A DNA stretch of 64,000 bases from Hyalangium minutum (GTDB taxonomy: Bacteria; Myxococcota; Myxococcia; Myxococcales; Myxococcaceae). This document shows, piece after piece, positions 33,763-48,483 of this stretch. How positions within the stretch are numbered: the first letter of the stretch is position 1; the number at the start of each line of letters is the position of its first letter. Below the pieces are notes generated by a model. The model made no database searches. It saw only the letters and a list, made by a program, of their open reading frames with translations, and was not told the DNA's origin. Both the position numbers and the translations under genes were made by a program. The stretch spans positions 62,001 to 126,000 of the forward strand of contig NZ_JMCB01000007.1 of the NCBI RefSeq assembly GCF_000737315.1. The letters run 5' to 3'.

Positions 33763-33906
33763 GTGCCGGGGCACAGTAGCGCACCCTCCGCCTTGACTGG
33801 CGTGTCAGATGAGGGGCGGGGGGCGGTCTCCCTGCGCCAGACGAGGCTCTGGCCCTTCGAGTCCCTGCCCGCCCACACTTCGGGTGCAGTGCGACAGCGA
33901 GGGACT

Positions 33907-34579: not shown

Positions 34580-35149
34580 ATGGGAACCGTCGTGCACGCT
34601 GCCTCGCCCGCCACCCTCCAAGAGTACAAGGTCCGAGCCTCCATCCTCCTCAAGGAGCTGCTCTCCTCGGACTCCGCGCGCGCCACCCGCGCCGCTGAGC
34701 GCCTGCGCGTGCTGCCCGCCTTCTCCGGGCTCTCTCCTGCCGAGCTGCTCGCTCGAAGGGACTCCGTGCAGCGCAAGCATGCGCTGGCCGTCATCGCCCA
34801 GGAGCAGGGGTATGGCTCCTGGGCCGAGCTGAAGCAGGCCCTCGGCGAGGAGAAGGAGGGCCCTCGGTTCGGCCCCGAGGCCTTCTTCATCCGCCCCATG
34901 AGCCCCTTCCTCAACCGTTGGTGCTCCTCCTATGAGGAGGCGCTCGGGGCACTTCAGACCGGCGGCGGCTACCTCTTTCCCTACCGCACGCAGTTCTTCG
35001 TCTGCGACGCCACCTTCCTGCAAGCGCTCGGAGTGGATGCCGCGGATCCCGACTGGGAGCGGATCGGACGCAACTGGGTGAAGCCGTTGGATTTGGCCGC
35101 CCACGCGCGGCTCGAGCAGAAGCTCATCGCGCTCGGCTTCACCCGCTGA
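34580..35149 (+). CDS. Hypothetical protein
   Basis: 189-aa ORF with GAGGG RBS; K...A..L...ALAVIAQEQGYGSWAELK helical motif; no confident family. Confidence 0.7.
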   Translation: MGTVVHAASPATLQEYKVRASILLKELLSSDSARATRAAERLRVLPAFSGLSPAELLARRDSVQRKHALAVIAQEQGYGSWAELKQALGEEKEGPRFGPEAFFIRPMSPFLNRWCSSYEEALGALQTGGGYLFPYRTQFFVCDATFLQALGVDAADPDWERIGRNWVKPLDLAAHARLEQKLIALGFTR

Positions 35150-35191: not shown

Positions 35192-35587
35192 ATGTCCTCT
35201 TCCTCGGATTCTTCCGAGACGCGGGGCGGCCGCAGCCGCCGCGCCGAACTCAAGCGCCACTACAAGGAGAAGCCCCCGCCCATGGGCATGTTCGCCGTCC
35301 GCAACCGCGCCAACGGCAAGGTGCTGGTGGGCACCAGCATCAACCTCCCGGGCGCCCTCAACCGGATCCGCTTCCAACTGGAGCTGGGCGCACACGAGAA
35401 CCCCGCGCTCCAGCAAGACTGGCAGCGTCATGGCGCCGACAATTTCTCCTTCGAGGTGCTCGACGAGCTACCCCCCTCGGAGGAGCCGCGCGAGGACCCT
35501 CGGGCGGAGCTCGAGGTGCTGGAGGCGCTCTGGCTCGAGCGGCTCAAGCCCTACGGTGAGGCGGGCTACAACACGCCACCTCCCTAG
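35192..35587 (+). CDS. GIY-YIG nuclease family protein
   Basis: GMFAVRN...GKVLVGTS, LQQDWQRHGADNFSFEVLDE, GYN. Confidence 0.75.
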   Translation: MSSSSDSSETRGGRSRRAELKRHYKEKPPPMGMFAVRNRANGKVLVGTSINLPGALNRIRFQLELGAHENPALQQDWQRHGADNFSFEVLDELPPSEEPREDPRAELEVLEALWLERLKPYGEAGYNTPPP

Positions 35588-35682: not shown

Positions 35683-37920
35683 ATGGCACGAACGCAGAAG
35701 CCTGCCTTTTCGCTCGGGGTGGGGAGTCACGCGGCGGACACCCTCGTGGTGGTCCGCTTCACCGGCCGGGAGGCGCTGTCATGCCCGTACGACTTCCAGC
35801 TCGAGTTCTTCGCCCGGGATGGGCAGGTGCTCGAGCTGGCGGAGCTCTCGAACACCCAGGTGCTGCTGACGATTCGGCTTGGGGAGGTGCCGCTGCGCCA
35901 CGTGCACGGGTGGGTGCGGCAGGCCGAGGCGCTGGGCCGCATCGGAGGCCGCTGGCACTACCGAGTGCGGGTGAGGCCAAAGCTCGAGCGTCTGCGCCAG
36001 ACCCAGGACAGCCGTATCTTTCAGGAGCTGACGGTGCCCGACATCGTCAAGGCCCTGCTGGGGGAGTGGCGCGTGGAGCACCGCTTCCTGCTGAGCCGCT
36101 CCTACGCCGTGCGCGAGTACTGCGTGCAATACCGTGAGTCGGACTTCGCCTTCATCTCCCGGCTGCTGGAGGAGGAGGGCATCTTCTACTTCTTCGAGCA
36201 CGCCGAAGATGGCCACACGCTGGTGCTGGGGGACGTTTCGAATGCCCACGTGGCGTTGCCCGGAGGGCCGGTCCTGCCCCTGCGGCCGGAAGATGGGCGT
36301 GCCCACGACGAGGAGTTCATCTCCCGGCTGGAGCGGGTGCACCGGCTGCGGCCGGGAGAGGTGATGCTGCGCGACTTCGACTTCAAGAAGCCGGGGTTGG
36401 ACCTCTCCACGCGGAGCTCCAGTGTGGAGGGCCTGCGAGTGCTGGAACTGTACGACTACCCGGGAGCGTACGTGGCGCCGGGGGAGGGCCAGGGCCTGGT
36501 GCGCACGCGCATGGAGGAGAAGGCCCAGGGGGCACGGACGTACACGGGGCGCAGCGTGTGCCCGCGGCTGGCGCCGGGCTACCTCTTCGAAGCGGAGAGC
36601 CCCGGGGAGGGCACCTGGGCCGGGTTCTACCTCGTGGAAGAGGTGGTGCACTCCGGCCAGCAGCCCGACACGCTGGGGGCCCCCGAGACGCTGGGCGAGG
36701 TGTATCACAACGACTTTCGAGCCCTGCCCAAGGGAGTGCCCTTCCGGCCCATGCGGGTGACGCCTCGGCCTCGCATCCCCGGGATACAGACGGCGACGGT
36801 GAGCGGCCCCGCGAGCGAGGAGATCCACACGGACGAGTACGGCCGCATCAAGGTGCAGTTCCACTGGGACCGGGAGGGGCAGCACAACGAGCGCTCCTCG
36901 TGCTGGATGCGGGTGGGCCAGGGCTGGGGCGGGCTCGGCTGGGGCGCCGTGTACCTGCCCCGCATCGGCCAGGAGGTGGTGGTTCGCTTCCTGGAGGGCG
37001 ATCCCGACCGGCCGCTGATCGCGGGCACCGTCTACAACGGAGGCAACGCGGCGCCGTACGGGCTGCCGGGCGACAAGACGAAGACCACGCTCAAGAGTTC
37101 CTCCAGCCTGGGCGGCGCGGGTTTCAACGAGGTGCGGAGCGAGGACTCAGCGGGCAAGGAGGAGATCTTCACCCACGCCCAGAAGGACGAGTCCCTCATC
37201 ACGGAGAACGACAAGAGCCAGGAGGTGCGCGGGTACGAGGACCTCCTGGTGAAGAAGGACCGCAGCCTCTGTGTGGAGTGGAACCAGGAGCTCACCGTGG
37301 AGCTCAACGACAGCAACCTCATCGAAGGCAACCAGAGGCTGCGGGTGAGTGGGAATCGCTCCACCACGACTCACGAGAACCATGGGGAGTCCGTGCAGGG
37401 CAACCAGGGCATCACCGTGGGCAGCAACTTCACGTCGATGGTCAATCAGGCCACCACGGAGGGGGTGGGGGCCGCCAAGGCTCTGACGATTGGAGGGGGC
37501 TACTCCATCAATGTGGGCCTGGGGATGGCCGAGACCACCGGAGGCCTCAAGGCCGTCGAAGTGGGCGCCGCCATGATCGAACTGGTGGGCATCCGTCGCG
37601 AGGAGAGCGTGGGGCAGAACAAGCAGACCCTGGTGGGCCTGGACTTCGAGTCGCAGTGCGGCGGCGGAATGACGCAGGCGGCGGGCCAGTCGCTCCAGGA
37701 GAACGTGGGTGGCAAGACCTCCGTGAGCGCGAAGGAAGGTGCTGGCTGGCTGGCCAAGAAGTTCGTGCTGACGGCGGAGGACACCTTCACGCTCCTGGTG
37801 GGCGGCCAGCTGATCCTGAAGCTCGAGAAGTCTGGCGCGGTGACCTTCATGGGGAAGACCCTCACCATCGACAGCAAGGAGACGCAGTTCCGCGGCGGCA
37901 CGGTGCATTCGCGGCCCTGA
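35683..37920 (+). CDS. vgrG: Type VI secretion spike protein VgrG (copy 1)
   Basis: FTGREALS, SRIFQ, REYCVQYRESDFAFISRLLEEEGIFYFFEH, IHTDEYGRIKVQFHWDR, PRIGQEVVVRFLEGDPDRP, gp5-type beta repeats. Confidence 0.95.
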   Translation: MARTQKPAFSLGVGSHAADTLVVVRFTGREALSCPYDFQLEFFARDGQVLELAELSNTQVLLTIRLGEVPLRHVHGWVRQAEALGRIGGRWHYRVRVRPKLERLRQTQDSRIFQELTVPDIVKALLGEWRVEHRFLLSRSYAVREYCVQYRESDFAFISRLLEEEGIFYFFEHAEDGHTLVLGDVSNAHVALPGGPVLPLRPEDGRAHDEEFISRLERVHRLRPGEVMLRDFDFKKPGLDLSTRSSSVEGLRVLELYDYPGAYVAPGEGQGLVRTRMEEKAQGARTYTGRSVCPRLAPGYLFEAESPGEGTWAGFYLVEEVVHSGQQPDTLGAPETLGEVYHNDFRALPKGVPFRPMRVTPRPRIPGIQTATVSGPASEEIHTDEYGRIKVQFHWDREGQHNERSSCWMRVGQGWGGLGWGAVYLPRIGQEVVVRFLEGDPDRPLIAGTVYNGGNAAPYGLPGDKTKTTLKSSSSLGGAGFNEVRSEDSAGKEEIFTHAQKDESLITENDKSQEVRGYEDLLVKKDRSLCVEWNQELTVELNDSNLIEGNQRLRVSGNRSTTTHENHGESVQGNQGITVGSNFTSMVNQATTEGVGAAKALTIGGGYSINVGLGMAETTGGLKAVEVGAAMIELVGIRREESVGQNKQTLVGLDFESQCGGGMTQAAGQSLQENVGGKTSVSAKEGAGWLAKKFVLTAEDTFTLLVGGQLILKLEKSGAVTFMGKTLTIDSKETQFRGGTVHSRP

Positions 37921-37957
37921 GCCCGCGCGTGGGTGCGCTCAGCGCTCTTACCGCTCG

Positions 37958-37969
37958 GGTGGTACAGCC
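37958..37969 (+). promoter_or_regulatory. Motif GGTGGTACAGCC upstream of vgrG-2
   Basis: Identical to 35629-35640. Confidence 0.4.
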
Positions 37970-38038
37970 AAGGTCCAGCCCCCGCCCTACAGTGTTTTCT
38001 ACCCGACGTTGCCACATGGATTCAGAGGCGGACTGTTT

Positions 38039-40303
38039 ATGGTGGCCCCTGCCGCACTTCATGCCAATCAAGCGGAGTTCGAGTTCGAGACCGCGGCCCA
38101 CGCACCCGGTGAGCTGGCGGTCGTGGAGTTCCGCGCGGAGGAGGGGCTCTCCGAGCTCTACTCGCTCGAGATCGCCCTGGCCGCGCCCGCGCATGTGGTC
38201 GTGGACGAGAAGGGCCTGGTGGGCCAGAGCGCGCTGCTGACGGTGCACCTGGGAGGTGGAGCGGCCTGCTACTTCCACGGAATGATTTCACGCGTGGCGC
38301 GCTGGGACGCCGGCAAGGGCCCGGAGCGCCAGCGCTACCGCGTCACCGTGGTGCCTCGGCTGTGGGCGCTGCGCCATATCCACCGCAGCCGCATCTTCCA
38401 GGAGCTGTCCGTCCCGGAGATCGTCTCCCAGGTGCTCAGCGAGGGCGGGGTGCGGCATGTCCTCTCTCTGAAGGCGGCCTACCCCAAGCGCGAGTACTGC
38501 GTGCAGTACCGCGAGTCGGATCTCGACTTTGTCTCCCGGCTGCTCGAAGAGGAGGGCATCTTCTATTCTTTCGAGCACTCCGAGGACGCGCATGTCCTGG
38601 TGCTCAACGACGCCTCCATCACCTGCCCGGCCCTGAGCGGCGATTCGCACCTCGTGTTTCGTGAGCCCTCGAGGATGGTGGCGGGCGGCGAGGCCGTGCA
38701 GGAGTTCTCCGCGAGGCTGCAGGTCCAGCCCGGTGCCGTGGTGCTGCGGGACTACAACTTCGTCCAGCCCCGGCTGGACCTGACCGTGGGCTCCGCCACG
38801 CAGGAGGGGGAGCGGGCGCTCGAGATCTACGACTACCCCGCCCGCTACGAGGAGCCGGGCGTGGGCCGGGGCCGCGCGAAAGTCCGCCTGGAGGAGCTGC
38901 GCTCACACGTGGAGCGGATGACGGGGGTCAGCACCTGCCGGCGGCTGCGCTCGGGCCACACCATCGAGCTGGACGAGCACCCAGTGGCCTCCTTCAACCA
39001 GGACTACCTGCTCCTCTCGGTGCGGCACATCGGCCGCCAGCCAGAGGCGCTCACGGTCGAGCAGGCCCACTCCGGTGTCCGGGAGGGCTACCGCAACGAG
39101 TTCGTCTGCATGCCCGCGAAGGTGCCCTACCGCCCCCCGCCGGACACCCCGCGCCCCATCATCCCCGGCGCGCAGACCGCCATCGTCGTGGGGCCTGGAG
39201 GCGAGGAGATCCACACGGATCCGCACGGCCGCATCAAGGTGCAGTTCCACTGGGACCGCGAGGGCCAGCGCAACGAGCGCAGCTCCTGCTGGATCCGTGT
39301 GAGCCAGGCCTGGGCAGGCCAGGGCTGGGGAGCGCTCTACCTGCCGCGCATTGGGCACGAGGTGGTGGTGGAGTTCCTCGAGGGAGACCCCGACCGGCCC
39401 CTGGTGACCGGCAGCGTCTACAACGGCCAGAACCCCTCACCCATCGGCCTGCCGGGGGACAAGACGCGGAGCACGCTCAAGAGCTCCTCCAGCCTGGGGG
39501 GCTCCGGCTCCAACGAGCTGCGCTTCGAGGACTCCGCGGGCCGCGAAGAGGTCTACCTGCACGCCCAGAAGGACTTCAACATCGTCGTCGAGAACGACAA
39601 GACGCAGGAGGTCCGTGGCTACGAGAAGCTGCTGGTCAAGAAGGACCGCAGCCGCACCATCGAGGGCCATCAGTCCCTGGAGGTGAAGAAGAACGACGAC
39701 ACCGCGGTTGGCGGTAACCAGACCCTGGCGGTCGTCCAGAACCGTTCGACGACCGTTCTGGGCAACCACACCGAGGACGTGGGGGCCAACCAGACCATCC
39801 AGGTGGATGGCAACCAGAGCGTGAAGGTGGCCATGGCCTCCTCGGAAACGGTGGGGCTCGGGAAGATGCTCAACATCGGTGGCGGCTATGCCATCACCGT
39901 GGGCGCCGCCCTCAACCAGCTCGTGGGCGGCCTCATGGCCGAGCAGGTCGGTCTGAGCAAGATGGAGACGGTGGGCCTGCACAAGTCCGAGACCGTGATG
40001 GGTTCGCGCAACCTCAAGGTGGGCGCTGATCTCTCCGAGCAGGTGGGCAGCAACCGGACCCTCCAGGTGGGCAAGGATCTGCTGGTGAGCGTGGGGGGCC
40101 CGCTCGATCACACGGCAAAGGAGACGTACACGCTGACCGCCAAGGAGATCACCCTCGAGGCCCAGGAGGAGTTCCTCCTCAAGGTGGGCGCCGCGACGCT
40201 CCAGGTACAGAAGAGCGGAGACGTGGTCCTCAAGGGCGCCACTATCCAGATCACAGGACGTGAGTCCGTCGTCGTCGAGGGCTCCAAGATCACGGAGAAC
40301 TGA
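38039..40303 (+). CDS. vgrG: Type VI secretion spike protein VgrG (copy 2)
   Basis: EEGLSELY, REYCVQYRESDLDFVSRLLEEEGI, IHTDPHGRIKVQFHWDR, PRIGHEVVVEFLEGDPDRP, NELRFEDSAGREE. Confidence 0.95.
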   Translation: MVAPAALHANQAEFEFETAAHAPGELAVVEFRAEEGLSELYSLEIALAAPAHVVVDEKGLVGQSALLTVHLGGGAACYFHGMISRVARWDAGKGPERQRYRVTVVPRLWALRHIHRSRIFQELSVPEIVSQVLSEGGVRHVLSLKAAYPKREYCVQYRESDLDFVSRLLEEEGIFYSFEHSEDAHVLVLNDASITCPALSGDSHLVFREPSRMVAGGEAVQEFSARLQVQPGAVVLRDYNFVQPRLDLTVGSATQEGERALEIYDYPARYEEPGVGRGRAKVRLEELRSHVERMTGVSTCRRLRSGHTIELDEHPVASFNQDYLLLSVRHIGRQPEALTVEQAHSGVREGYRNEFVCMPAKVPYRPPPDTPRPIIPGAQTAIVVGPGGEEIHTDPHGRIKVQFHWDREGQRNERSSCWIRVSQAWAGQGWGALYLPRIGHEVVVEFLEGDPDRPLVTGSVYNGQNPSPIGLPGDKTRSTLKSSSSLGGSGSNELRFEDSAGREEVYLHAQKDFNIVVENDKTQEVRGYEKLLVKKDRSRTIEGHQSLEVKKNDDTAVGGNQTLAVVQNRSTTVLGNHTEDVGANQTIQVDGNQSVKVAMASSETVGLGKMLNIGGGYAITVGAALNQLVGGLMAEQVGLSKMETVGLHKSETVMGSRNLKVGADLSEQVGSNRTLQVGKDLLVSVGGPLDHTAKETYTLTAKEITLEAQEEFLLKVGAATLQVQKSGDVVLKGATIQITGRESVVVEGSKITEN

Positions 40304-40329
40304 CAAGCCTTTCACCCAGGAGCCACACC

Positions 40330-40794
40330 ATGGCCGCACGCCGTTCCTCACTCGGGATTGCTCCCGCCACCCCCAGTTCGTCTCTTCCTTCGGCCCTCCT
40401 GGGCTGGATCACCGGCTATGAGCCGGGGGAGGGGCCTCTCGTGGACTATCCTGGCAACCCGTCCGGGCCCCTGCGGGCCCGGTTGCTCGTCGACACCGGC
40501 GCACAGGCATTGCGCTCGGCGGCCGCGTCTCGCTGCCCCGTCGCGCTGCTCTTCGAGAATGGAGACCCCGCGCTTCCGCTCGTTGCCGGGCTGGTGTGGC
40601 CGCCCGGTGAGCGTGAGGCGCAGGTAGATGGAGAGCGGATCGTCCTGACGGGGGAGAAGGAGATCGAGCTGCGCTGTGGCGCCGCATCCATTTCCCTGAC
40701 CCGGAACGGGAAGGTCGTGATTCGAGGGGCCTACGTCGAAACTCGGGCGAAGGGCACGAACCGGATCAAGGGCGGAGCGGTCCAGATCAACTGA
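40330..40794 (+). CDS. DUF6484-like protein; resembles a minimal gp5/gpV spike (OB-fold plus beta-strand tail)
   Basis: VALLFENGDPALPLVAGLV and ELRCGAASISLTRNGKVVIRG...IKGGAVQIN align by eye with VgrG segments. Confidence 0.75.
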   Translation: MAARRSSLGIAPATPSSSLPSALLGWITGYEPGEGPLVDYPGNPSGPLRARLLVDTGAQALRSAAASRCPVALLFENGDPALPLVAGLVWPPGEREAQVDGERIVLTGEKEIELRCGAASISLTRNGKVVIRGAYVETRAKGTNRIKGGAVQIN

Positions 40795-40813
40795 AAGGCG
40801 AGCGGCTGAAGCC

Positions 40814-42070
40814 ATGCTCTTTTGGGATGTCATTGAGCGGCACTTCGATGAGGCGGACTTCCTGTGGGGTGTCTGGGAGCAGAGCCTCGTGTCGCCCAAC
40901 CACACCCTCGAACAAGTCGAGAGAGGTCCCGAGGCACGGCTGCTGGCCCACCTCGACGGGCTCGTGGCCAATGGCCCCGAGGTGGCGCGGCGGCTGCTGC
41001 TGCCGGCGCTGGAGAAGGATGATCCACCTCAGGTGAGTGCGGCGGCCGCCGCGTTGTTGCAGAGCCCGGGTGAGGCGGGGATCGAGGCCGTGCTCGTCGC
41101 GCTGCGCATGCGGCCAGTCCAGGGCGGCGCTCTGGTGCGGGCGCTGGCGTGCTCGGGCCGGGCGGACTTGCTGGACCGCATGCGGGGATTGCTGGGGGCC
41201 TCAGAGGAGGGCGTCGTCACAGCCGCGGCGGAAGTTCTGGTGTTCCACCACGCCTCCGTGGGGGACGCGCTGCCAAGGCTCTTGAAGAGCGGCAACCCGA
41301 TGGCACGGGCGCTGGGGCTCAGGGCGCTGCTGAACGAGCCGGCCGGGGCTCGGCACAGCGCCGCGGTACAGGAAGGTCTGAAGGAGCAGAACTCCTGGGT
41401 GGTTGCGGCCGCCATGGAGGTGGGCTGCCGCCTGGGGTTGGATGCGGCCTGGCGGCGCGTGCGCGAGCGCGCGGTGGAGGGGGACAGGGAGGCGATGCTG
41501 CTGCTTGCGCTCGGCGGGGGCCCTGCCGAATACAAGGAGCTGACGGCGGCACTCGCCGCTCCGGCTCGCCGGCCCGGAGCGCTGTGGGCGCTGGGCTTTG
41601 CTGGTACCCCCGAGGGGGTCGACGCCAGCCTCGAGTGGCTGGACGACACGCGGGCAGGGCCGCTGGCGGGCGAGGTGTTCACGGCGGTGACGGGAGTCGG
41701 CCTCAGGGAAGCGGGGCTGACAGCGCCCTGGGAGCGGCGGCCGAAACTCACGCATACGCCAGAGGATGAGCTGCCTCGCCCGGATGCGGCGAAGGTGAGG
41801 GATTGGTGGAGCCGACACCACGTTCGCTTTGTGTCCCGCCAGCGGTACCTCCAGGGAGAGCCGCGCGCTCTCTCGGGAATCAAGGCCGCGCTTGTTCAGG
41901 GGCCCATGCGCCGCCGCGCGGCCCTCCTCTTGGAGCTTCAGCTTCGCGTCCCCGTGAGGCGCGCCCCACGTCTTCAGCCCCGGGCTCCCACACGCCAGCA
42001 GTACGCCGAGCTGTCGGCGATGGCCTCATTCGAGGACGCTGGCCTTCACCTGAGCCGCTCGCTTCTGTGA
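40814..42070 (+). CDS. TIGR02270-like helical repeat protein
   Basis: WDVIERHFDEADFLW, RLLAHLDGL, ALWALGFAG, AGEVFTAVTG; position in the vgrG cluster. Confidence 0.8.
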   Translation: MLFWDVIERHFDEADFLWGVWEQSLVSPNHTLEQVERGPEARLLAHLDGLVANGPEVARRLLLPALEKDDPPQVSAAAAALLQSPGEAGIEAVLVALRMRPVQGGALVRALACSGRADLLDRMRGLLGASEEGVVTAAAEVLVFHHASVGDALPRLLKSGNPMARALGLRALLNEPAGARHSAAVQEGLKEQNSWVVAAAMEVGCRLGLDAAWRRVRERAVEGDREAMLLLALGGGPAEYKELTAALAAPARRPGALWALGFAGTPEGVDASLEWLDDTRAGPLAGEVFTAVTGVGLREAGLTAPWERRPKLTHTPEDELPRPDAAKVRDWWSRHHVRFVSRQRYLQGEPRALSGIKAALVQGPMRRRAALLLELQLRVPVRRAPRLQPRAPTRQQYAELSAMASFEDAGLHLSRSLL

Positions 42071-42100
42071 GCTTCGCTCCTTGCAATCGCTCTGCTCTCC

Positions 42101-43231
42101 ATGGAACTCGTCAACAAGTCCCGCCTCCCTCTGGAAGTGACGACGGCGCTCGACAAGGGCGGAAAGGAGCACCTGCTCCTCGTGGCGAAGGCGACCTACC
42201 GCTTCGGTGAGGGCCGCCGCATGCCAGAGCGCGTGGAGGAATCTCTTCCCATTGCCTACGCCGACACCTTCATAGGGGAGCCGGGCCTCTCTTCTCCGCT
42301 CTACGAGGCGGACATGGCGATGACGAAGCGGTGGTGCGACGTGCTCGTGGACGCGACGGCCCATGCCCCGGAGGGCCGGCCCGTGAAGGAACTGGAGGTG
42401 GCCGTTCGCGTGGGCACCTTCGAGAAGCAGTTCCTCGTCGTGGGAGACCGGGTGTGGCAGCAGGGGCTGTTACGCGTGTCCGCCAGCACGCCCGAGCCCT
42501 TCACCTCGATGCGGATCCACTATGGCCGTGCCTTTGGCGGCAGTCCGAAGCTCTCCTCGAAAGAAGGACAGGAAACCTACCTTTCCAATCCTGTCGGCCG
42601 GGGCTATTGCCCGGATCCACGCGCACACATCGTCGACCAGATGCCGCTGCCCAACACGGAGGACGCCGGGCAGCGTGTCACCTCTCCCAGCGCTCAGGTC
42701 CAGCCGCTCTCGCTGGGACCCATTGGCCGGAGCTGGAATCCCCGAAGCGCCTACGCGGGGACTTACGATGCGCGCTGGAGGGAGCACGTCTTCCCCCTGC
42801 TCCCCGAGGACTTCGATGAGGCCTTCTTCCAGGCCGCGCCTCCGGATCAGCAGATCGACTTCATTCGAGGCGGAGAGCCCGTGGTGCTGCGCAATCTGGT
42901 GCCCGGCGAGCCGCACGTCACCTTCAAGCTGCCCAGGCCCGAGCTGGTGGTGCGGCTGCTCTACGCCTCGCACCGGACCATCGAGCTGTCGCCTGTGGTC
43001 GACACGGTGTTCCTGGAGCCCGACGCGAAGCGCTTCACGATGGTGTATCGCACCGCGCTGCCGCTCGATCGGAGGGGGCTCTTCGGGATCAGCCTGATGG
43101 CGGCGGGCCCCGTGTGCAAGCGCTGGTGGGAGTCCAAGGTTCTCGGGACCGAGGACTGCGGGTGTGGGGGAGACAGTTCCAAGGACGAGACGCCGGCGTC
43201 GCTGATGGACATGGAGGAACTGGAGCCATGA
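42101..43231 (+). CDS. DUF2169 family T6SS adaptor/chaperone
   Basis: LLVAKATY, K..CDVLVDATAHAP, VVGDRVW, YGRAFGG, NPVGRG, AGTYDARW, FFQAAP.DQQ, DTVFLEPD. Confidence 0.9.
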   Translation: MELVNKSRLPLEVTTALDKGGKEHLLLVAKATYRFGEGRRMPERVEESLPIAYADTFIGEPGLSSPLYEADMAMTKRWCDVLVDATAHAPEGRPVKELEVAVRVGTFEKQFLVVGDRVWQQGLLRVSASTPEPFTSMRIHYGRAFGGSPKLSSKEGQETYLSNPVGRGYCPDPRAHIVDQMPLPNTEDAGQRVTSPSAQVQPLSLGPIGRSWNPRSAYAGTYDARWREHVFPLLPEDFDEAFFQAAPPDQQIDFIRGGEPVVLRNLVPGEPHVTFKLPRPELVVRLLYASHRTIELSPVVDTVFLEPDAKRFTMVYRTALPLDRRGLFGISLMAAGPVCKRWWESKVLGTEDCGCGGDSSKDETPASLMDMEELEP

Positions 43232-44250
43232 GGACTCAGCTGCGCATCGCCGCCTCCGGGATGTGCTGCGCGGTGGGCGGCTTTGCCCGTGCCGCGCGTG
43301 CGGCCATCCGCGCGGGGCTCAACCGCTTCGAGGAGTCAGAATTCGTGGATGCCAGGGCCGAGCCGCTCATCGTCTCGCGCATGCCCCTAGAGAACCTGTG
43401 GGGGCCCCGGCGCATCGCGACGATGTTCGAGGCCGCCGTGAAGGACTGCATCTCGGAGGCCCCTGCTTTCAGCCCCAAGACCACGGCCCTGCTGTTGCTG
43501 GTCGCGGAGCAGGGACGCCCTGGCTATCAGGACTCGTGGGCAGAGGCCTGCGTGGCCGCCTACGAGAAGCTGACAGGGATGGCTCCTTCCACGGAGGTGC
43601 GGACTCTTGCGCTCGGACGGGCGGGGATTGTGAGTGCGCTGCGGGAGGCCCACTCGCTGCTCGTGCACCGCTACGCCCGGCAGGTCCTGGTGGTGGGCGT
43701 GGACAGCTACCTCAACGCGGAGGCAATCACTCACCTGCTCCGGAAGAGGCGGCTCATGACCGAGGAGGTCAGCGAGGGCTTCATCCCAGGGGAGGGCGCC
43801 GGCGCGCTGCTGCTGGAGCTCCCTCCACGTGAGCCAGTGGGGCTCCACGTGCTGGGAACCGGAGCCGCCGAGGAGACGGCTACCCTCGATAACGACGAGC
43901 CCGTGCGTGCGTTGGGGCTGACTCGAGCGCTGCGCGAAGCGCTCGCGGCGAGTGGGTACCACATGAATGATCTCCACTTCCGCATCACGGATCTCAATGG
44001 GGTGCCTCTCGCCTTCCGCGAAGCCGCCCTGGCGGACACTCGCCTGCTTGATCACCGCGCGGGCCGTTTCCCACTCCTGCACCTCGCGGACTGCATTGGA
44101 GAGACTGGCGCTGCGGTGGGGCCCCTGTCTCTCGCGTACCTCGCCGACGCCATGGCTCGGGGATACGTGCCAGGCACACGGGCCGTGCTCCACTGTGCCA
44201 ACGATGGTCCGGAGCGTGCCGCCGTGGTGGCCGAATGCTTCCCGTCGTGA
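43228..44250 (+). CDS. Ketoacyl-synthase-like (PRK06147-like) T6SS-associated protein
   Basis: GMCCAVG, VGVDSYL, GFIPGEGAGALLL, DLNG, IGETGAA; ATGA overlap with DUF2169. Confidence 0.82.
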   Translation: MRTQLRIAASGMCCAVGGFARAARAAIRAGLNRFEESEFVDARAEPLIVSRMPLENLWGPRRIATMFEAAVKDCISEAPAFSPKTTALLLLVAEQGRPGYQDSWAEACVAAYEKLTGMAPSTEVRTLALGRAGIVSALREAHSLLVHRYARQVLVVGVDSYLNAEAITHLLRKRRLMTEEVSEGFIPGEGAGALLLELPPREPVGLHVLGTGAAEETATLDNDEPVRALGLTRALREALAASGYHMNDLHFRITDLNGVPLAFREAALADTRLLDHRAGRFPLLHLADCIGETGAAVGPLSLAYLADAMARGYVPGTRAVLHCANDGPERAAVVAECFPS

Positions 44251-44283
44251 TTCGCACTTTCCTTCTTCCCTCTACGGAGCGCC

Positions 44284-45882
44284 ATGCAAACGCATGTGTA
44301 CGCCAACGGGCGTGAGATCTGCAGCCAGGCGGCGGATGGCAAGTCCTCCGCAGCCTTCCCTGACGTGTGCTGGAGTCCACCGGCTCCCCCCGCTGGCCCC
44401 ATCCAGCTCCCGTACCCCAATACGGCTTTCGCGAAAGACCTCGCGAACGGGACCAACACAGTCTTCATCTGTGGCTCCATCGTCGCACGCAAGGACGAGA
44501 GCTACATCTCCACCAGCACGGGCAATGAGCCGGCCACGAGGCAGTTTCCCAAGGGCGTCAACACGGGGGCGCTCAAGGGGAAAGCCTATTTCACGAGCTG
44601 GTCCATGAACGTGATGGTGGAGGGCTCGAATGTCCCGCGCCATCAGGACCTGATGACGCACAACCATGCAAGCCCGGGCGGCCAGACTCCCGCACACACC
44701 TACGTCGATGACGCACTGAAGGACTTCCCGAAGGACTGCAAGAAAGAGCGGAAGGCGATCTTGCAGGAGTGTGGCCCGGAGCCCAAGGAATCCGAGCAGG
44801 CCAAGAACATCCGCAAGGCCCGCAGGAAGTTCCTGTCGAAGGTGGGAGAGCGCTTCAACAAGGTTCTTGGAGGCGCCAATGGATCCTCCAAGGGCGGTAA
44901 CACCGCTTGGATGGAGCACTGCGATGGGCTGTGGATCAAGCCTTCCGCAGACTATCACTCGCAGATGGAGAAGCTCGCGGGAGAGATTCAAGACATCAAG
45001 AATGATCTGGGCGGTATTGCTGCCACGGTGGTCAAGCCGGCGATCGAGTCGCTGGGACGGGAGTTGCTCGAGAGAGCTGCCAGGGAGGCGGCGGAGCGGG
45101 CTGTCAAGCTCGGGGCCCGCAGCGCGGCCCGCTGGGGCGTGGGTGCTGCGGGCGCCGCGGTCGCGGGCGTTGGCGTGATTGTGACGGAGACCATCGCGAC
45201 CGCGTGGAACGTCTATGACATGGCCTCGACTGCTTACGAAGGATATCAGCTCACCAGCCAGATGATGGACTCTCTGAACGAGATCAAAGACGTGATGGGG
45301 CACTTCGACAATGCCCTCCAGGGGTTGGACTCCGCGTGGCAGGACGCCAAGTCCAATCCCCAGAAGGCCATCGCGAACTTGATGCAGGTCATCGCCCGTC
45401 TCAACTCTTGCGTCCGCGCGCGGAGATGCAATCTCGTTCCCTTCAAGAACACCGATTCCGCCAAGGCTCTGGGCGGTAGCGGGTGTTGCCCGGGGCAGAC
45501 GGGCCATCACGTGCTTCCTCATTCTATGACCGAGGGCAATTGCCCCGGATACAAAGAGGATGAGGCCCCTACGCTCTGCGTCGAGGGCGTCAATTGGTCT
45601 CATGGCTCACATGGGATGATGCATCGGGCCCTGAAGGCGCGGATGGACGATTACAAGAATGGCTGGTTCGGCTCCAAGACGGAGATCAGCTATGAGAAGG
45701 CGCGTGACTTGGGGATCAAGAGCATCACGGATACTTTCCCAGAGTCGAAGTGCAGCGAGGATTGTCTGAAGGCTCAGCTCGATAAGTATTACAAGGACAA
45801 GTGCAAGTCCCCACTGCCTCCTGTCTCCGGCATGCCAGGGAGAAGTCAGAAGATCCCGTCGCCCAAGAGCCGGAGCGAGTGA
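44284..45882 (+). CDS. T6SS effector: DUF4150/PAAR-like N-terminus plus C-terminal GHH-type HNH nuclease
   Basis: VYANG...FPDVC.SPP...LPYPN...GKAYF...NV.RH.D..T.N; C-terminal CCPGQTGHHVLP...PTLCVEG...HG.MH. Confidence 0.85.
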   Translation: MQTHVYANGREICSQAADGKSSAAFPDVCWSPPAPPAGPIQLPYPNTAFAKDLANGTNTVFICGSIVARKDESYISTSTGNEPATRQFPKGVNTGALKGKAYFTSWSMNVMVEGSNVPRHQDLMTHNHASPGGQTPAHTYVDDALKDFPKDCKKERKAILQECGPEPKESEQAKNIRKARRKFLSKVGERFNKVLGGANGSSKGGNTAWMEHCDGLWIKPSADYHSQMEKLAGEIQDIKNDLGGIAATVVKPAIESLGRELLERAAREAAERAVKLGARSAARWGVGAAGAAVAGVGVIVTETIATAWNVYDMASTAYEGYQLTSQMMDSLNEIKDVMGHFDNALQGLDSAWQDAKSNPQKAIANLMQVIARLNSCVRARRCNLVPFKNTDSAKALGGSGCCPGQTGHHVLPHSMTEGNCPGYKEDEAPTLCVEGVNWSHGSHGMMHRALKARMDDYKNGWFGSKTEISYEKARDLGIKSITDTFPESKCSEDCLKAQLDKYYKDKCKSPLPPVSGMPGRSQKIPSPKSRSE

Positions 45883-45898
45883 TATCGGAAGGCCGGAT

Positions 45899-46894
45899 AT
45901 GCTGATTGACAAGAACGACTACGAAGAATGCCTCCGTGGGTTCACGGTGACGGACTGTGCTGTTCGCAGCCGGACCATGTTCTATCTCGTGGCCATGTCA
46001 GACCCGGGCTCGGAGGGGCCGCCCCCGCCGGAGACCGAGCTGGTCACCCGGGTGATCAGCTATTTCGCGCACAAGGCGCCTGAGGAGCGCTGGGGCTACT
46101 CCGCTTTTCGTGGCATCGATGGCCTGGTGGCAGGGTCTAGCCAGAAGCCGCTCTCGCAGTTCGTCGGCGTCGACGGGAGTGGCCAGGTGGTGGCCATTGG
46201 CAGCGGCTTCGAGGACCTCGAGGAGACGATCCCCTCAGGCCGGAAGGGCCCTTTGCGGGGGGGCGTCCGGAAGCTACGGACCATCGACGGCTGGCTGCAC
46301 TTATCCTCGGGGTATCGAGGGCTGGGCCGCCGCGACGAGCGCAACCAGTGGAGCTCGCTCTGCGCGGGGCTCGAGTTCACTCCGGATCCTGACGAGGACT
46401 CGGCCACCTACGGCTTTGACGACCTCGACGCCTTCGGGCCGGAGGACTGGTACTGCGTGGGGGGACGAGGAGACGTCTGGCGCTTCAGCGGCAAGAAGTG
46501 GGAGCACCTCGAGTTCCCCAGCAATATGCGGCTCCACACAGTCTGTTGCGGAGGCGATGGCTGGGTGTACGTCAGCGGCTCGAGCGGACACATCTGGAAG
46601 GGCCGCCGCGATGAGTGGCGGCTCATCCACAGCGATCACATGGTCCTGCCCTTCAAGGACATGGTCTGGTTTCAGGACCGCGTGTACTGCACCTCGGACT
46701 ATGGGCTGTGGGAGATTGCCGGGGACGAGCTGCGTGAGAGTGAGGTGCCCCCCGAGATCAAGATCTGCTCCGGGAACCTGTCCGTAGCGGATGGCGTGAT
46801 GCTGCTGGCGGGCGTGTATGGCGCCTCGTATCACGATGGCAGCGGCTGGAAGCACCTCTACAACACGGCCGCGTTCTCGCCGGTCACGCTGTAG
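45899..46894 (+). CDS. Putative cognate immunity protein (acidic, Trp/Gly-rich, beta-propeller-like)
   Basis: 16 nt downstream of the effector; no signal peptide; repeated GxVW.F.GxxW-type motifs. Confidence 0.65.
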   Translation: MLIDKNDYEECLRGFTVTDCAVRSRTMFYLVAMSDPGSEGPPPPETELVTRVISYFAHKAPEERWGYSAFRGIDGLVAGSSQKPLSQFVGVDGSGQVVAIGSGFEDLEETIPSGRKGPLRGGVRKLRTIDGWLHLSSGYRGLGRRDERNQWSSLCAGLEFTPDPDEDSATYGFDDLDAFGPEDWYCVGGRGDVWRFSGKKWEHLEFPSNMRLHTVCCGGDGWVYVSGSSGHIWKGRRDEWRLIHSDHMVLPFKDMVWFQDRVYCTSDYGLWEIAGDELRESEVPPEIKICSGNLSVADGVMLLAGVYGASYHDGSGWKHLYNTAAFSPVTL

Positions 46895-46925: not shown

Positions 46926-47052
46926 GGGCACTCCCCGTGTCAGTCACTCTTACCTGGGAACACCCTTTCCATGCCGGTGGGTGGCGTCCGCGCCGCAGGT
47001 AGGTTATTCCCAGGAGGACGCAGGCAGTGCGGCGTCTCGGGTAGGACACGGT

Positions 47053-48483
47053 ATGGATCTCGGCAAGGCGGGCTGGCTCTCCTCTCTCCTCGAGGAGGCG
47101 GTGGTCACACATCGGAGTGTGTCCGCGCCTGCCGTGATGCCCGGCCTGTCCGAGATCAGTTCCTCGGGCCGCGCCCGCGCTCGCGACTACCTGCGCCGCA
47201 CCCTCCGCGCCTCGGGCCTGCTCTACGGCACTCCGGCCGAGAAGACGCCGCCCCTGGCAGAAGACTTCACCACAAGTGGATCCAGCGGCACCACGCGCGC
47301 ACCTGAGGAGCAGCTCTTCCTCGCGGTGGTGCGCACCCTGGCGCGCATGGCGCTGGACATCGCGCTCCTCACCGCGGCGCCCACCCCGCCCACAGAGGAT
47401 CACCTCCTGCTGCTGTTCGCCGTCTTCACCAACGAGCTGGATGTGGCCGAGTCCATCGCCGCCAAGCTCCAGGAAGGCGCCAAGGCCACCCGGCGGCACC
47501 AGTCGAAGGTGGAGAGCGCGCTGGAGAAGCGGGCCATCTCGCTGGCAGGAGACCCCGTCTACGGGCTGGTGCTCCACAACGGGGCGCTGTACGCGGACGC
47601 GCAGATGTTCGGGCGGCAGGCCATCGACTACTTCGCGCGCGAGCGGTTCCAGCGCGCGGAGGCTCAGCGCCGCATCGACTTCGCTGCTCGGCAGAAGGCC
47701 CTGCTGGTGAAGGTGCTGGCGGGGCTGTCATGCGCGGATCGCGAGCCCAGCTACGCCTCGCGCCGAGCCATCCTCCGGCAGGTGGAGGATCTGGCGCTGC
47801 CCTCGGATGTCGAGTCGGACCTGAAGGCCGCGGTGAAGAAGTCCTTCGAGCACCGGCTGCCGGTGCGCACCATGGTGGCCGAGGTGCGCAGCAAGGACAT
47901 GCAGCACTTCATCCTGGAGCAGACGCTGCTGGCCTCGCTGGTGGACGGGCAGCGCTCCCGGGGCGAGCGGGCCTTCATCCAGGAGCTGGCCCATGCGCTG
48001 AGCGTGCCTGACGCCGAGCTGCACCGGCTGGAGCTGGAGATGGCCGAGTTCTACGCCCGTCACCGCTCCGTGGTGGACGTGTTCACGGTGACGGCCGCTG
48101 CGGGGCTGATGGGAGAGGATTTTGTCAGCCGCATCCAGGAGACGCTGGAGAAGAACCTCGGCCGGTTGATGCAGGAGGCCCGCGAGACGGGCGACCTGGC
48201 GGTGCTGCTGGCCAAGGCGGCGCGAGGCCAGCGCCTGTCGGGAGACGAGCGCCGGCGGATGCGGGCGCAGCTCATTGACGTGGCCAAGGCCATCCCCGCG
48301 CTGGCCATCTTCGCCGCGCCGGGCGGGGTGCTGCTGCTCATCGCCCTGTCCAAGGTGCTGCCCTTCAGCCTGCTGCCTAGCGCCTTCCAGGACGAGCCTG
48401 CGCTGCCCCCCGAGTTCGCGGACGGCAAGCAGGAGACCAAGCTCGCCGCACTCCCCGAGAACACCGAGCGCCGGGTGGGGTAG
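47053..48483 (+). CDS. LETM1-like C-terminal motif / TerB-like protein
   Basis: C-terminal LIDVAKAIPALAIFAAPGGVLLL...LLPSAF resembles the LETM1-related bacterial motif; start uncertain. Confidence 0.65.
   Translation: MDLGKAGWLSSLLEEAVVTHRSVSAPAVMPGLSEISSSGRARARDYLRRTLRASGLLYGTPAEKTPPLAEDFTTSGSSGTTRAPEEQLFLAVVRTLARMALDIALLTAAPTPPTEDHLLLLFAVFTNELDVAESIAAKLQEGAKATRRHQSKVESALEKRAISLAGDPVYGLVLHNGALYADAQMFGRQAIDYFARERFQRAEAQRRIDFAARQKALLVKVLAGLSCADREPSYASRRAILRQVEDLALPSDVESDLKAAVKKSFEHRLPVRTMVAEVRSKDMQHFILEQTLLASLVDGQRSRGERAFIQELAHALSVPDAELHRLELEMAEFYARHRSVVDVFTVTAAAGLMGEDFVSRIQETLEKNLGRLMQEARETGDLAVLLAKAARGQRLSGDERRRMRAQLIDVAKAIPALAIFAAPGGVLLLIALSKVLPFSLLPSAFQDEPALPPEFADGKQETKLAALPENTERRVG

What the first reader, a model, noticed from the sequence alone, without database searches (positions are those of the whole stretch)
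40330..40794. DUF6484-like protein looks like a miniature VgrG/gpV spike
Seen: VALLFENGDPALPLVAGLV (40540-40596) parallels the VgrG-2 OB-fold segment VVVEFLEGDPDRPLVTGSV (39362-39418). Its C-terminus RIVLTGEKEIELRCGAASISLTRNGKVVIRGAYVE...IKGGAVQIN parallels the VgrG-2 tip EITLEAQEEFLLKVGAATLQVQKSGDVVLKGATIQ...VEGSKITEN. Known: phage P2 gpV/Mu gp45 spikes consist of just an OB-fold plus a trimeric beta-helix. Inference: a third, hub-less spike that may extend the tip, or hold the PAAR-like effector before hand-over to VgrG. With the TIGR02270-like, DUF2169 and KS-like proteins it would form a multi-component tip-loading machine.
Basis: partly seen in the sequence, partly recalled or inferred. 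Interest (0 to 1): 0.72.

Follow-up and report, generated by a model that had tools for sequence, protein, structure and literature searches.

The report
Hub-less VgrG mimic (TvpC, DUF6484)
This small gene encodes a cut-down copy of the type VI secretion spike (its OB-fold plus the last 54 residues of its tip), a protein family described in 2026 as TvpC, which is thought to hold a PAAR-like toxin ready before it is passed to the real spike.

Summary
ORF 40330-40794(+) encodes a 154-aa Pfam DUF6484 protein. Its OB-fold motif and its last 54 residues are homologous to the adjacent VgrG-2: BLASTP E 3e-6, profile-profile E 4e-11, and an alignment that runs end to end onto a shared C-terminal Asn. 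An AlphaFold2 model gives a confident OB-fold followed by beta strands. The top 34 Foldseek matches in the PDB are all central spikes of contractile injection systems (Afp8, PVC spike, R2 pyocin spike, VgrG, P2 gpV, Mu gp45). There is no gp27 hub.

The gene lies in a vgrG-vgrG-DUF6484-TIGR02270-DUF2169-PRK06147-(DUF4150+GHH2 nuclease)-immunity island. This is the "synteny type A" cluster of Sachar et al. 2025 and the "Class II Tvp system" of Monlezun et al. (bioRxiv/EMBO J 2026). Those authors already describe DUF6484 proteins (TvpC, e.g. PA0096) as trimeric partial VgrG mimics that assemble a PAAR pre-complex, after which VgrG replaces TvpC.

The "extends the tip" alternative is disfavoured. 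The mechanism has been shown experimentally only for the Class III (DUF3540) TvpC.

Three points here go beyond those papers:
- The tip mimicry is exactly end-anchored.
- It matches VgrG-2 and not VgrG-1.
- The TIGR02270 gene, missing from the published Class II model, is the most constant neighbour of DUF6484.

The parts
35683..37920 (+). vgrG-1: full-length VgrG/TssI, 745 aa, ending ...FRGGTVHSRP. Probably not the cognate carrier of the downstream effector.
   Evidence: TIGR03361 E 7e-180. The TvpC family profile hits it only weakly (E 1.6e-3). The TvpC tip scores at most 30 anywhere in it.
38039..40303 (+). vgrG-2: full-length VgrG/TssI. The ORF opens at TTG 38009, and ATG 38039 is the likely start. 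It ends ...VVVEGSKITEN. It is the likely cognate spike whose tip TvpC copies.
   Evidence: TIGR03361 E 7e-194. Its last 54 aa are the best ungapped match to the TvpC tip in the whole protein (score 75, next best 26). BLASTP E 3e-6. Start codon.
40330..40794 (+). tvpC-like gene: 154-aa DUF6484 protein, the finding itself.
   Evidence: Pfam PF20093 E 1.2e-17. 416 homologues, all PF20093. 4524 clusters at 50% identity.
40330..40392 (+). N-terminal tail, aa 1-21. Predicted disordered; it takes the place of the gp27 hub.
   Evidence: pLDDT 48-58 and no secondary structure. Poorly conserved and variable in length. A 16-aa unstructured tail is reported for S. marcescens TvpC.
40393..40596 (+). OB-fold, aa 22-89 (b1-b2-b3, helix, b4-b5). 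It ends in the gp5/gpV signature V.LLFE.GDP.LPL..G.
   Evidence: pLDDT above 90; strands 22-31, 35-39, 70-75 and 83-88, helix 58-66. hhalign to the VgrG OB motif gives probability 86.8%, E 4e-6. Foldseek matches spikes.
40630..40791 (+). Short beta-prism (tip mimic), aa 101-154. About 6-7 repeats of roughly 8 residues, ending ...GTNRIKGGAVQIN-COOH. This is the most conserved part of the family and lies outside the Pfam model.
   Evidence: Conservation. hhalign to the last 54 aa of 19 cognate VgrGs is end to end, probability 97.2%, E 4.4e-11. The end-anchored score is +67, against -31 to -78 for register shifts of 1-6, and the terminal Asn is identical in 28/28 pairs. Weak Pfam DUF2345 hits in 12/54 members.
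40814..42070 (+). TIGR02270-family HEAT/ARM-like protein, 418 aa, 19 bp downstream of tvpC.
   Evidence: TIGR02270 E 3.4e-63, 214 bits against a cut-off of 206.8. Immediately downstream of DUF6484 in 46 of 74 loci.
42101..43231 (+). DUF2169 protein (TvpA / Tap-type chaperone of DUF4150 PAAR-like domains).
   Evidence: PF09937 E 1.9e-93. Role taken from the literature.
43228..44250 (+). PRK06147 beta-ketoacyl-synthase-like protein (TvpD). Its start, ATG 43228, overlaps the DUF2169 stop (ATGA).
   Evidence: NF004798 E 1.2e-81. Start codon and RBS. Literature.
44284..45882 (+). Effector of the Tse7 type: N-terminal Tox-PAAR-like (DUF4150/PIPY) domain plus C-terminal Tox-GHH2 HNH/EndoVII nuclease.
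   Evidence: PF13665 E 2.3e-27 (aa 22-130) and PF15635 E 1.2e-11 (aa 420-502).
45899..46894 (+). Probable cognate immunity protein, 331 aa. The assignment is inferred from position only.
   Evidence: No family match. It follows the effector in the same order in L001 (67% identity), L002 (65%) and L071 (25%).

Best explanation
The gene encodes a DUF6484-type TvpC, the 'pre-spike' of a Class II Tvp accessory system of the type VI secretion system. The protein has a short disordered N-terminal tail, a gp5/gpV-type OB-fold, and a roughly 54-residue beta-prism. That prism is an exact, end-anchored copy of the last 54 residues of the neighbouring VgrG-2. By homology it should form a trimer whose blunt end offers the same platform as the VgrG-2 tip. 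It has no gp27 hub, so it cannot nucleate an Hcp tube.

Inferred mechanism, based on the S. marcescens Class III system and on published AlphaFold models of P. aeruginosa PA0096-PA0099:
1. The DUF4150 (PAAR-like) domain of the GHH2 nuclease effector folds onto the TvpC tip.
2. DUF2169 (TvpA) and the PRK06147 protein (TvpD) shield its hydrophobic surface. The TIGR02270 HEAT-like protein probably takes part as well.
3. This pre-complex is transferred to VgrG-2, which displaces TvpC.
4. The loaded VgrG-2/PAAR-toxin spike is built into a T6SS encoded elsewhere in the genome and fired. TvpC stays in the cell.

Shown here: family membership, the OB-fold, homology of the tip to VgrG and its exact register, absence of a hub, and conserved synteny. 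Inferred: trimer formation, PAAR binding, hand-over, and non-secretion.
For: - **Family:** Pfam DUF6484 at E 1.2e-17. All 416 homologues carry PF20093.
- **Fold:** the AF2 model has an OB-fold at pLDDT above 90 followed by C-terminal strands. Foldseek PDB ranks 1-34 are all contractile-injection central spikes: Afp8 at 2.5e-5, R2 pyocin spike, VgrS, VgrG1, P2 gpV, Mu gp45. The top BFVD hits are phage gp5/Vgr OB-fold spikes.
- **Homology to VgrG:** shown. The tip aligns end to end with the last 54 aa of cognate VgrGs at E 4.4e-11. The register is exact and the terminal Asn is identical in 28/28 pairs. The match is to VgrG-2 and not VgrG-1.
- **No hub:** no VgrG/gp27 model matches, and the protein is only 154 aa.
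- **Synteny:** the locus carries vgrG, DUF2169, PRK06147 and a DUF4150-GHH2 effector, and this is repeated across Myxococcota, Gammaproteobacteria, Acidobacteriota and Planctomycetota.
[quoted passage not shown] In S. marcescens, pull-downs show a TvpC-TvpAB-TvpB-Paar1 pre-complex that excludes VgrG1 and is required for the VgrG1 complex. An AF model places the Tse7 PAAR domain on the PA0096 prism. Per Sachar et al., transposon mutants of each gene of the P. mirabilis type A cluster lose killing.
Against: - No experiment exists for any DUF6484 protein. The pre-complex and hand-over have been shown only for the DUF3540-type TvpC, and hmmscan finds no similarity between DUF6484 and DUF3540 (no DUF3540 hit among the 54 members).
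- My structure model is a monomer. The last 20 residues have pLDDT of only 66-72, so neither the trimeric prism nor PAAR binding was modelled.
- TvpC tips do not co-vary with their own VgrG tips more than with others (67.5 vs 65.5, permutation p 0.065). There is therefore no pair-specific signal of a shared ligand.
- The published Class II model says PA0096 barely contacts TvpA or TvpD, and it leaves out the TIGR02270 protein.
Confidence: 0.7

Rival explanations
1. Tip extension, or a third fired spike. A TvpC trimer stacks on the VgrG-2 tip (or between VgrG and PAAR), lengthens the needle, and is secreted with it.
For: It has the same fold as the distal part of a spike. The VgrGs of Tvp systems differ widely in prism length.
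Against: In the one system tested, TvpC and VgrG1 never co-purify, and each binds the same partners. The TvpC prism copies the VgrG-2 tip in exact register, so the two would compete for the PAAR-like domain rather than stack. The OB-fold base of gp5/gpV-type proteins sits on a gp27-type hub, not on a beta-helix end (established knowledge of T4 gp27-gp5 and P2/Mu baseplates). No interface for stacking is known.
Confidence: 0.06
2. Split spike. TvpC is the gp5-like half of a two-piece spike and assembles on a separate gp27-only hub protein, giving an alternative spike that carries the DUF4150 toxin without either VgrG.
For: Phages such as T4 (gp27 + gp5) and P2/Mu (hub + gpV/gp45) use separate hub and spike proteins. 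Foldseek matches gpV-type spikes of similar size, such as the R2 pyocin spike and P2 gpV.
Against: No gp27-only gene lies in the locus or in the 13 kb upstream. A full-length VgrG lies directly upstream in 28 of 74 loci, and the tip copies that VgrG. P. aeruginosa Tse7 delivery depends on VgrG1b.
Confidence: 0.05
3. Decoy or brake. TvpC sequesters the PAAR-toxin away from VgrG, as a negative regulator or storage form, rather than promoting loading.
For: As a tip mimic it must compete with VgrG for the PAAR-like domain. The TvpC tip is far more conserved than VgrG tips, as expected for a high-affinity holder.
Against: Deleting tvpC in S. marcescens abolishes the VgrG1 complex and its pathway. 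Inactivating each gene of the P. mirabilis type A cluster abolishes killing. Both show a positive requirement.
Confidence: 0.07
4. Relic of a phage, tailocin or eCIS gpV-type spike gene, with no role in the T6SS.
For: Fold matches include the pyocin, P2, Mu and eCIS spikes.
Against: There are no baseplate, sheath or tube genes nearby. Linkage to vgrG, DUF2169 and DUF4150 genes is constant across phyla. There are 4524 sequence clusters with a near-invariant C-terminus. The prism lacks the His-rich apex domain of gpV-type spikes: there is no His in its last 54 residues.
Confidence: 0.02

Closest known systems
TvpC of Class II Tvp systems (DUF6484), e.g. P. aeruginosa PA0096 in the vgrG1b-tse7 cluster and V. 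parahaemolyticus VP1395 (Monlezun, Earl & Coulthurst, bioRxiv 10.64898/2026.02.23.707444; EMBO J 2026, doi 10.1038/s44318-026-00820-1)
   Same: Same Pfam family. Same architecture: a short tail, an OB-fold and a very short beta-prism (about 28 A in PA0096; about 6-7 eight-residue repeats here). Same partners in the locus: vgrG, DUF2169/TvpA, PRK06147/TvpD and a DUF4150+GHH2 effector like Tse7.
   Different: The host is a myxobacterium (closest match Hyalangium versicolor, 80%). There are two tandem vgrG genes. The TIGR02270 gene sits directly after tvpC, rather than after the effector/immunity pair as in the gammaproteobacterial loci L059 and L079 (L071 and L073 have the same gene order but no TIGR02270 match was detected). 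Like every DUF6484 protein, it has not been tested experimentally.
TvpC of Class III Tvp systems (DUF3540), S. marcescens Db10
   Same: An OB-fold plus beta-prism trimer without a gp27 domain. It is encoded next to vgrG, DUF2169 and DUF4150 genes. Experiments show it forms a PAAR pre-complex that excludes VgrG.
   Different: A different Pfam family with no detectable sequence similarity. It has a much longer prism (81 A), works with pentapeptide-repeat TvpAB/TvpB instead of PRK06147, and serves a small PAAR without a toxin domain.
VgrG/TssI (T4 gp27-gp5 fusion), in particular the adjacent VgrG-2
   Same: Homologous OB-fold motif, and a homologous final 54 residues ending in the same C-terminal Asn.
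   Different: It lacks the whole gp27-like hub and most of the beta-helix (154 aa against about 755), so it cannot seat on Hcp or the baseplate.
Phage and tailocin gpV-type central spikes (P2 gpV 3qr8, R2 pyocin spike 4s37, Mu gp45 9ki1_V; Pfam Phage_base_V)
   Same: Similar size and the same order of domains, an OB-fold followed by a trimeric beta-helix. These are among the top Foldseek matches.
   Different: There is no metal-binding apex domain to sharpen the tip; the protein ends in a blunt VgrG-type platform for a PAAR-like cap. It is not encoded in a baseplate module. Pfam Phage_base_V is matched only weakly, by 4 of 54 members.

Membership tests
DUF6484 / TvpC of Class II Tvp systems | Match to Pfam PF20093 above the gathering score | tested here: met
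   E 1.2e-17, 64.7 bits against 27.6, covering the full profile 1-61. All 54 aligned relatives match.
DUF6484 / TvpC of Class II Tvp systems | OB-fold followed by a very short beta-prism, with no gp27 domain | tested here: met
   OB-fold at pLDDT above 90. Only spike proteins match by fold. The prism is homologous to the last 54 aa of VgrG. No VgrG or hub model matches. The prism was modelled only as a monomer.
DUF6484 / TvpC of Class II Tvp systems | Encoded downstream of vgrG, together with DUF2169 (TvpA), PRK06147 (TvpD) and a DUF4150 PAAR-like effector | tested here: met
   All are present in one co-directional array, 35683-46894. The same set recurs in related loci.
DUF6484 / TvpC of Class II Tvp systems | Forms a homotrimer | not testable with these tools
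   The structure tool models single chains only. Trimer formation is inferred from homology to the trimeric VgrG beta-helix and from published models of PA0096.
DUF6484 / TvpC of Class II Tvp systems | Forms a PAAR/TvpA/TvpD pre-complex that excludes VgrG and is needed for effector delivery | not testable with these tools
   Shown only for the DUF3540 TvpC. For Class II it has been modelled, not measured.
VgrG / TssI | N-terminal gp27-like hub domain (TIGR03361/TIGR01646) | tested here: not met
   No match, whereas both neighbouring VgrGs match at E below 1e-120. The protein is only 154 aa.
VgrG / TssI | gp5-type OB-fold and C-terminal trimeric beta-helix | tested here: met
Phage gpV/gp45-type central spike (Phage_base_V) | Match to Pfam PF04717 | tested here: not met
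   The window protein does not match. Only 4 of 54 relatives match, with best E 0.054.
Phage gpV/gp45-type central spike (Phage_base_V) | C-terminal apex domain with His-coordinated metal that sharpens the tip (P2 gpV, phi92 gp138; recalled from the structural literature) | tested here: not met
   There is no His in residues 101-154. The chain ends where the blunt VgrG tip ends.
Phage gpV/gp45-type central spike (Phage_base_V) | Encoded within a baseplate or tail module | tested here: not met
   The neighbours are T6SS accessory and housekeeping genes.

The most novel reading that the evidence does not exclude
The TIGR02270 HEAT/ARM-like protein (40814-42070) is a dedicated fifth component that acts on TvpC itself, for example by capping its hub-less OB-fold base or by driving release of TvpC when VgrG-2 takes over the PAAR-toxin. 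If so, the published four-part Class II pre-complex model is incomplete. The basis is as follows. It is the most constant neighbour of DUF6484, lying immediately downstream in 46 of 74 loci, which is more frequent than the presence of a vgrG, DUF2169, PRK06147 or PAAR-like match anywhere within 8 kb. It lies 19 bp after tvpC here. It is occasionally fused to PRK06147. It is not mentioned in the Tvp paper. A second, smaller novel point is that the exact end-anchored tip copy matches only VgrG-2, so the TvpC tip may be a readable marker of which of several VgrGs carries a given DUF4150 effector.
Probability: 0.35. Interest if true: 0.5.

Novelty: new member of a known kind. Interest (0 to 1): 0.3.

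Why it matters
This result shows that the two-step, "dummy spike" route for loading PAAR-like toxins onto the T6SS is not confined to Proteobacteria. The full Class II gene set is intact in a myxobacterium, and relatives occur in Acidobacteriota and Planctomycetota. For annotation, DUF6484 genes can now be named TvpC-like, and their C-terminal 54 residues, which Pfam does not cover, should be recognised as the functional tip. For the field, the exact end-to-end copy of the cognate VgrG tip gives a simple sequence rule for pairing effectors with one of several VgrGs. The tight DUF6484-TIGR02270 pairing also points to a component missing from the current model. None of this changes the basic picture, which is already published.

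Tried and rejected
- **Pair-specific co-variation.** I tested whether each TvpC tip resembles its own upstream VgrG tip more than other VgrG tips. It does not do so significantly (67.5 vs 65.5, permutation p 0.065). TvpC tips are almost invariant, so the test has little power.
- **Other Pfam families.** I looked for matches to the window protein at E up to 10 and found none other than DUF6484. Among relatives there were only weak DUF2345 (12/54) and Phage_base_V (4/54) hits, and no DUF3540 hit.
- **NCBIfam.** The only hit on the protein was a spurious sub-threshold match to BagN/FevL (16.5 bits against a cut-off of 1000), which I ignored.
- **T6SS core genes and a gp27-only hub.** I looked in the window and found none. 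The island is an orphan vgrG island among housekeeping genes such as recA, tex, an aromatic amino acid lyase and an HSP90-family gene.
- **Opposite-strand ORFs.** Those overlapping 40330-40794 (for example 40348-40971, minus strand) were rejected as artefacts of a high-GC genome. Homologues across phyla support the plus frame.
- **Trimer or complex prediction.** Not attempted. The structure tool takes one chain and accepts only window or database sequences, and I did not try to get round that limit with artificial concatenations.

Full report
**1. What is there**

The coordinates given match an ORF exactly: 40330-40794, plus strand, 154 aa, ATG start, with an AGGAG 9 nt upstream. The window has 67% GC, and the closest relative of the protein is from Hyalangium versicolor (80% identity), so the source is a myxobacterium of the Archangium/Hyalangium group.

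The ORF is the third gene of a co-directional array:
- vgrG-1, 35683-37920
- vgrG-2, 38039-40303 (the ORF opens at 38009)
- the DUF6484 gene
- a TIGR02270 HEAT-like gene, 40814-42070
- a DUF2169 gene, 42101-43231
- a PRK06147 ketoacyl-synthase-like gene, 43228-44250, whose start overlaps the previous stop
- an effector with an N-terminal Tox-PAAR-like (DUF4150) domain and a C-terminal Tox-GHH2 nuclease, 44284-45882
- a probable immunity gene, 45899-46894

None of the flanking genes I scanned (about two-thirds of the predicted genes outside the island) encodes a T6SS core component. The neighbours are housekeeping genes, so this is an orphan vgrG/effector island.

**2. Check of the observation**

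- BLASTP of the protein against VgrG-2 aligns residues 102-154 with 712-764, the very end of VgrG-2, at E 3e-6. It aligns the motif 71-90 with 452-471 at E 0.008. VgrG-1 matches more weakly.
- A profile built from 54 family members (alignment A1) was searched against all 664 six-frame segments of the window. It finds only the ORF itself, VgrG-2 (E 3.7e-9) and VgrG-1 (E 1.6e-3).
- Searched against every PDB sequence, the same profile finds seven entries, all of them VgrG-type or Pvc8 spikes. In the three printed alignments the match falls into two colinear pieces, the OB motif and the tip.

**3. Structure**

An AlphaFold2 model built with the 54-sequence alignment has mean pLDDT 79. It shows four regions:
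- residues 1-21 are disordered;
- residues 22-88 form a canonical OB-fold (three strands, a helix, two strands) at pLDDT above 90;
- residues 90-103 are a low-confidence linker;
- residues 111-132 form strands, followed by a lower-confidence end. This is expected when an intertwined trimeric beta-helix is modelled as a single chain.

Foldseek against the PDB returns, at ranks 1-34, nothing but central spikes of contractile injection systems. They include Afp8 (2.5e-5), PVC spikes, the R2 pyocin spike, Salmonella VgrS, P. aeruginosa VgrG1, the phage P1 baseplate spike, P2 gpV and Mu gp45. Generic OB-fold proteins appear only from rank 35 on. Against predicted viral structures, the best matches include small phage proteins annotated as gp5/Vgr OB-fold or baseplate proteins.

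**4. The tip is an exact copy of the VgrG tip**

The most conserved part of the family is not the Pfam DUF6484 region (residues 24-89). It is the last ~55 residues, with consensus ...LRCGeASIsLkkNGKlVIRGAYVETRAKGTNRIKGGSVQIN-COOH.

I extracted the VgrGs encoded directly upstream of DUF6484 genes in other genomes. Twenty-nine of the 33 also end in ...KG.K(I/V)..N-COOH. Three tests confirm the match:
- Profile-profile comparison of the family with 19 such VgrGs aligns the last 54 columns of one with the last 54 columns of the other, end to end (probability 97.2%, E 4.4e-11).
- An ungapped alignment anchored at the C-terminus scores +67 on average. Shifting the register by 1-6 residues gives -31 to -78. 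The terminal Asn is identical in 28 of 28 pairs.
- Within the window, the best 54-residue match to the TvpC tip anywhere in VgrG-2 is its very last 54 residues (score 75, next best 26). VgrG-1, which ends ...RGGTVHSRP, has no comparable match.

The OB-fold motif also aligns profile to profile (probability 86.8%, E 4e-6).

The 54 residues show a period of about 8 residues marked by glycines, which gives six to seven strands per chain. At 4.8 A per strand this comes to about 30 A. That agrees with the 28 A reported for PA0096; the length estimate is my inference.

**5. Context elsewhere**

The family is large. It has 4524 clusters at 50% identity with E <= 1e-3, and 3190 with E <= 1e-10. Most of the best 150 are 155-200 aa long, and in nearly all the match runs to the last residue.

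A scan of species-representative genomes found 400 loci. The best 80 are mostly Myxococcota, with Gammaproteobacteria (Povalibacter, Steroidobacter, Thiodiazotropha, Sedimenticola, Methylomicrobium), Acidobacteriota, Planctomycetota, Desulfobacterota and others.

Within 8 kb of the DUF6484 gene, tblastn with the window's proteins finds:

| Neighbour | Loci out of 80 |
|---|---|
| TIGR02270 | 59 |
| DUF2169 | 44 |
| VgrG | 39 |
| PRK06147 | 35 |
| PAAR-like domain | 34 |

Directly upstream is a VgrG in 28 of 74 loci and a PAAR-like gene in 12 of 74. Directly downstream is the TIGR02270 gene in 46 of 74.

**6. What it is**

This locus is the "synteny type A" DUF2169 cluster of Sachar et al. (J Biol Chem 2025, PMC11883445). 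It is also the "Class II Tvp system" of Monlezun, Earl and Coulthurst (bioRxiv 10.64898/2026.02.23.707444, EMBO J 2026, PMC13373197).

Those authors name DUF6484 proteins TvpC. [quoted passage not shown] They also model the PAAR domain of Tse7 sitting on its prism, with PA0097 (DUF2169, TvpA) and PA0098 (PRK06147, TvpD) shielding it.

The experimental basis comes from the Class III system of S. marcescens, whose TvpC belongs to DUF3540:
- tagged TvpC and tagged VgrG1 each pull down TvpAB, TvpB and Paar1, but never each other;
- the TvpC complex forms without VgrG1;
- the VgrG1 complex does not form without TvpC.

According to Sachar et al., transposon inactivation of each gene of the P. mirabilis type A cluster abolishes killing by its DUF4150 effector. 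Liu et al. 2020 had earlier proposed PRK06147 as an adaptor.

**7. Mechanism and rivals**

The best-supported reading is that the window's protein is a TvpC. It would be a hub-less trimer offering the VgrG-2 tip surface, on which the DUF4150 domain of the nuclease effector is assembled with its chaperones. VgrG-2 then takes its place. Only the VgrG complex can nucleate Hcp and be fired, because only VgrG has the gp27 domain.

What I showed is family membership, the fold, the absence of a hub, the exact tip copy and the synteny. Trimerisation, PAAR binding, hand-over and non-secretion are inferred.

The rivals are each unlikely:
- **Tip extension.** This conflicts with the mutually exclusive complexes seen in S. 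marcescens, and with the fact that the two tips are equivalent and would therefore compete.
- **Split spike on a separate hub.** There is no hub gene, and it conflicts with the dependence of Tse7 on VgrG1b.
- **Decoy.** This conflicts with the loss-of-function phenotypes.
- **Phage relic.** This conflicts with the synteny and the strong conservation.

The remaining uncertainty is that no DUF6484 protein has been tested. DUF6484 and DUF3540 share no detectable sequence similarity. I also found no pair-specific co-variation between TvpC and VgrG tips.

**8. Novelty and verdict**

The protein is a new, uncharacterised member of a known kind.

Three points here are not in those papers as far as I could read them:
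- The mimicry is exact in register, down to the C-terminal Asn, and the conserved tip lies outside the Pfam model.
- In a tandem-vgrG locus the tip matches only one VgrG, which suggests a rule for pairing an effector with its VgrG.
- The TIGR02270 HEAT-like gene is the most constant neighbour of DUF6484, yet it is absent from the published Class II model. It is sometimes fused to PRK06147.

These are modest leads. Interest is low to moderate.

Noticed in passing
window 40814-42070 (+); loci L001-L080: The TIGR02270 HEAT/ARM-like gene is the most constant neighbour of DUF6484. It lies immediately downstream in 46 of 74 loci, and 19 bp downstream here. The published Class II Tvp model does not mention it, and Liu et al. 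2020 report it fused to 3.8% of PRK06147 proteins.
   Followed up: partly
window 35683-37920 and 38039-40303 (+): There are two tandem vgrG genes. The TvpC tip copies only VgrG-2 (ending ...KGSKITEN) and not VgrG-1 (ending ...RGGTVHSRP). VgrG-1 therefore probably serves a different cap or effector encoded elsewhere. Tandem vgrG pairs recur in L001, L018, L019, L026, L027 and L046.
   Followed up: partly
window 40330-45882: Third-position GC falls from 0.90 in the two vgrG genes to 0.78-0.79 in tvpC, the KS-like gene and the toxin gene (0.83-0.85 in the TIGR02270, DUF2169 and immunity genes). The toxin gene has 61% GC against 67% for the window. This suggests the accessory/effector module was exchanged horizontally, separately from the vgrG genes.
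   Followed up: no
window 35192-35587 (+): A 131-aa ORF directly upstream of vgrG-1 resembles GIY-YIG / group I intron homing endonucleases (TIGR01453 E 9e-8, below its cut-off; PADLOC HEase E 4e-7). The 189-aa ORF before it (34580-35149) matches nothing.
   Followed up: partly
window 30794-33774 (-): An HSP90-family protein (PRK14083, E 9e-242, 616 aa) is followed by an unannotated 377-aa ORF that overlaps it by 4 nt. It also has weak similarity to the sacsin-like ATPase head of the TmtA defence proteins.
   Followed up: no
window 14195-22444 (+): A giant 2749-aa ORF carries 12 PPC (pre-peptidase C-terminal) domains and has no clear catalytic domain.
   Followed up: no
window 46981-48483 (+): A 500-aa protein directly after the immunity gene shows sub-threshold LETM1-related and TerB/DUF533-like matches. 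Whether it belongs to the island is unknown.
   Followed up: no
window 44284-45882 (+), aa 38-46: The DUF4150 domain of the effector reads ...GPIQLPYPN... where Sachar et al. describe a P(I/V)P(Y/F) 'PIPY' core motif. This looks like a variant of the motif and was not analysed further.
   Followed up: no
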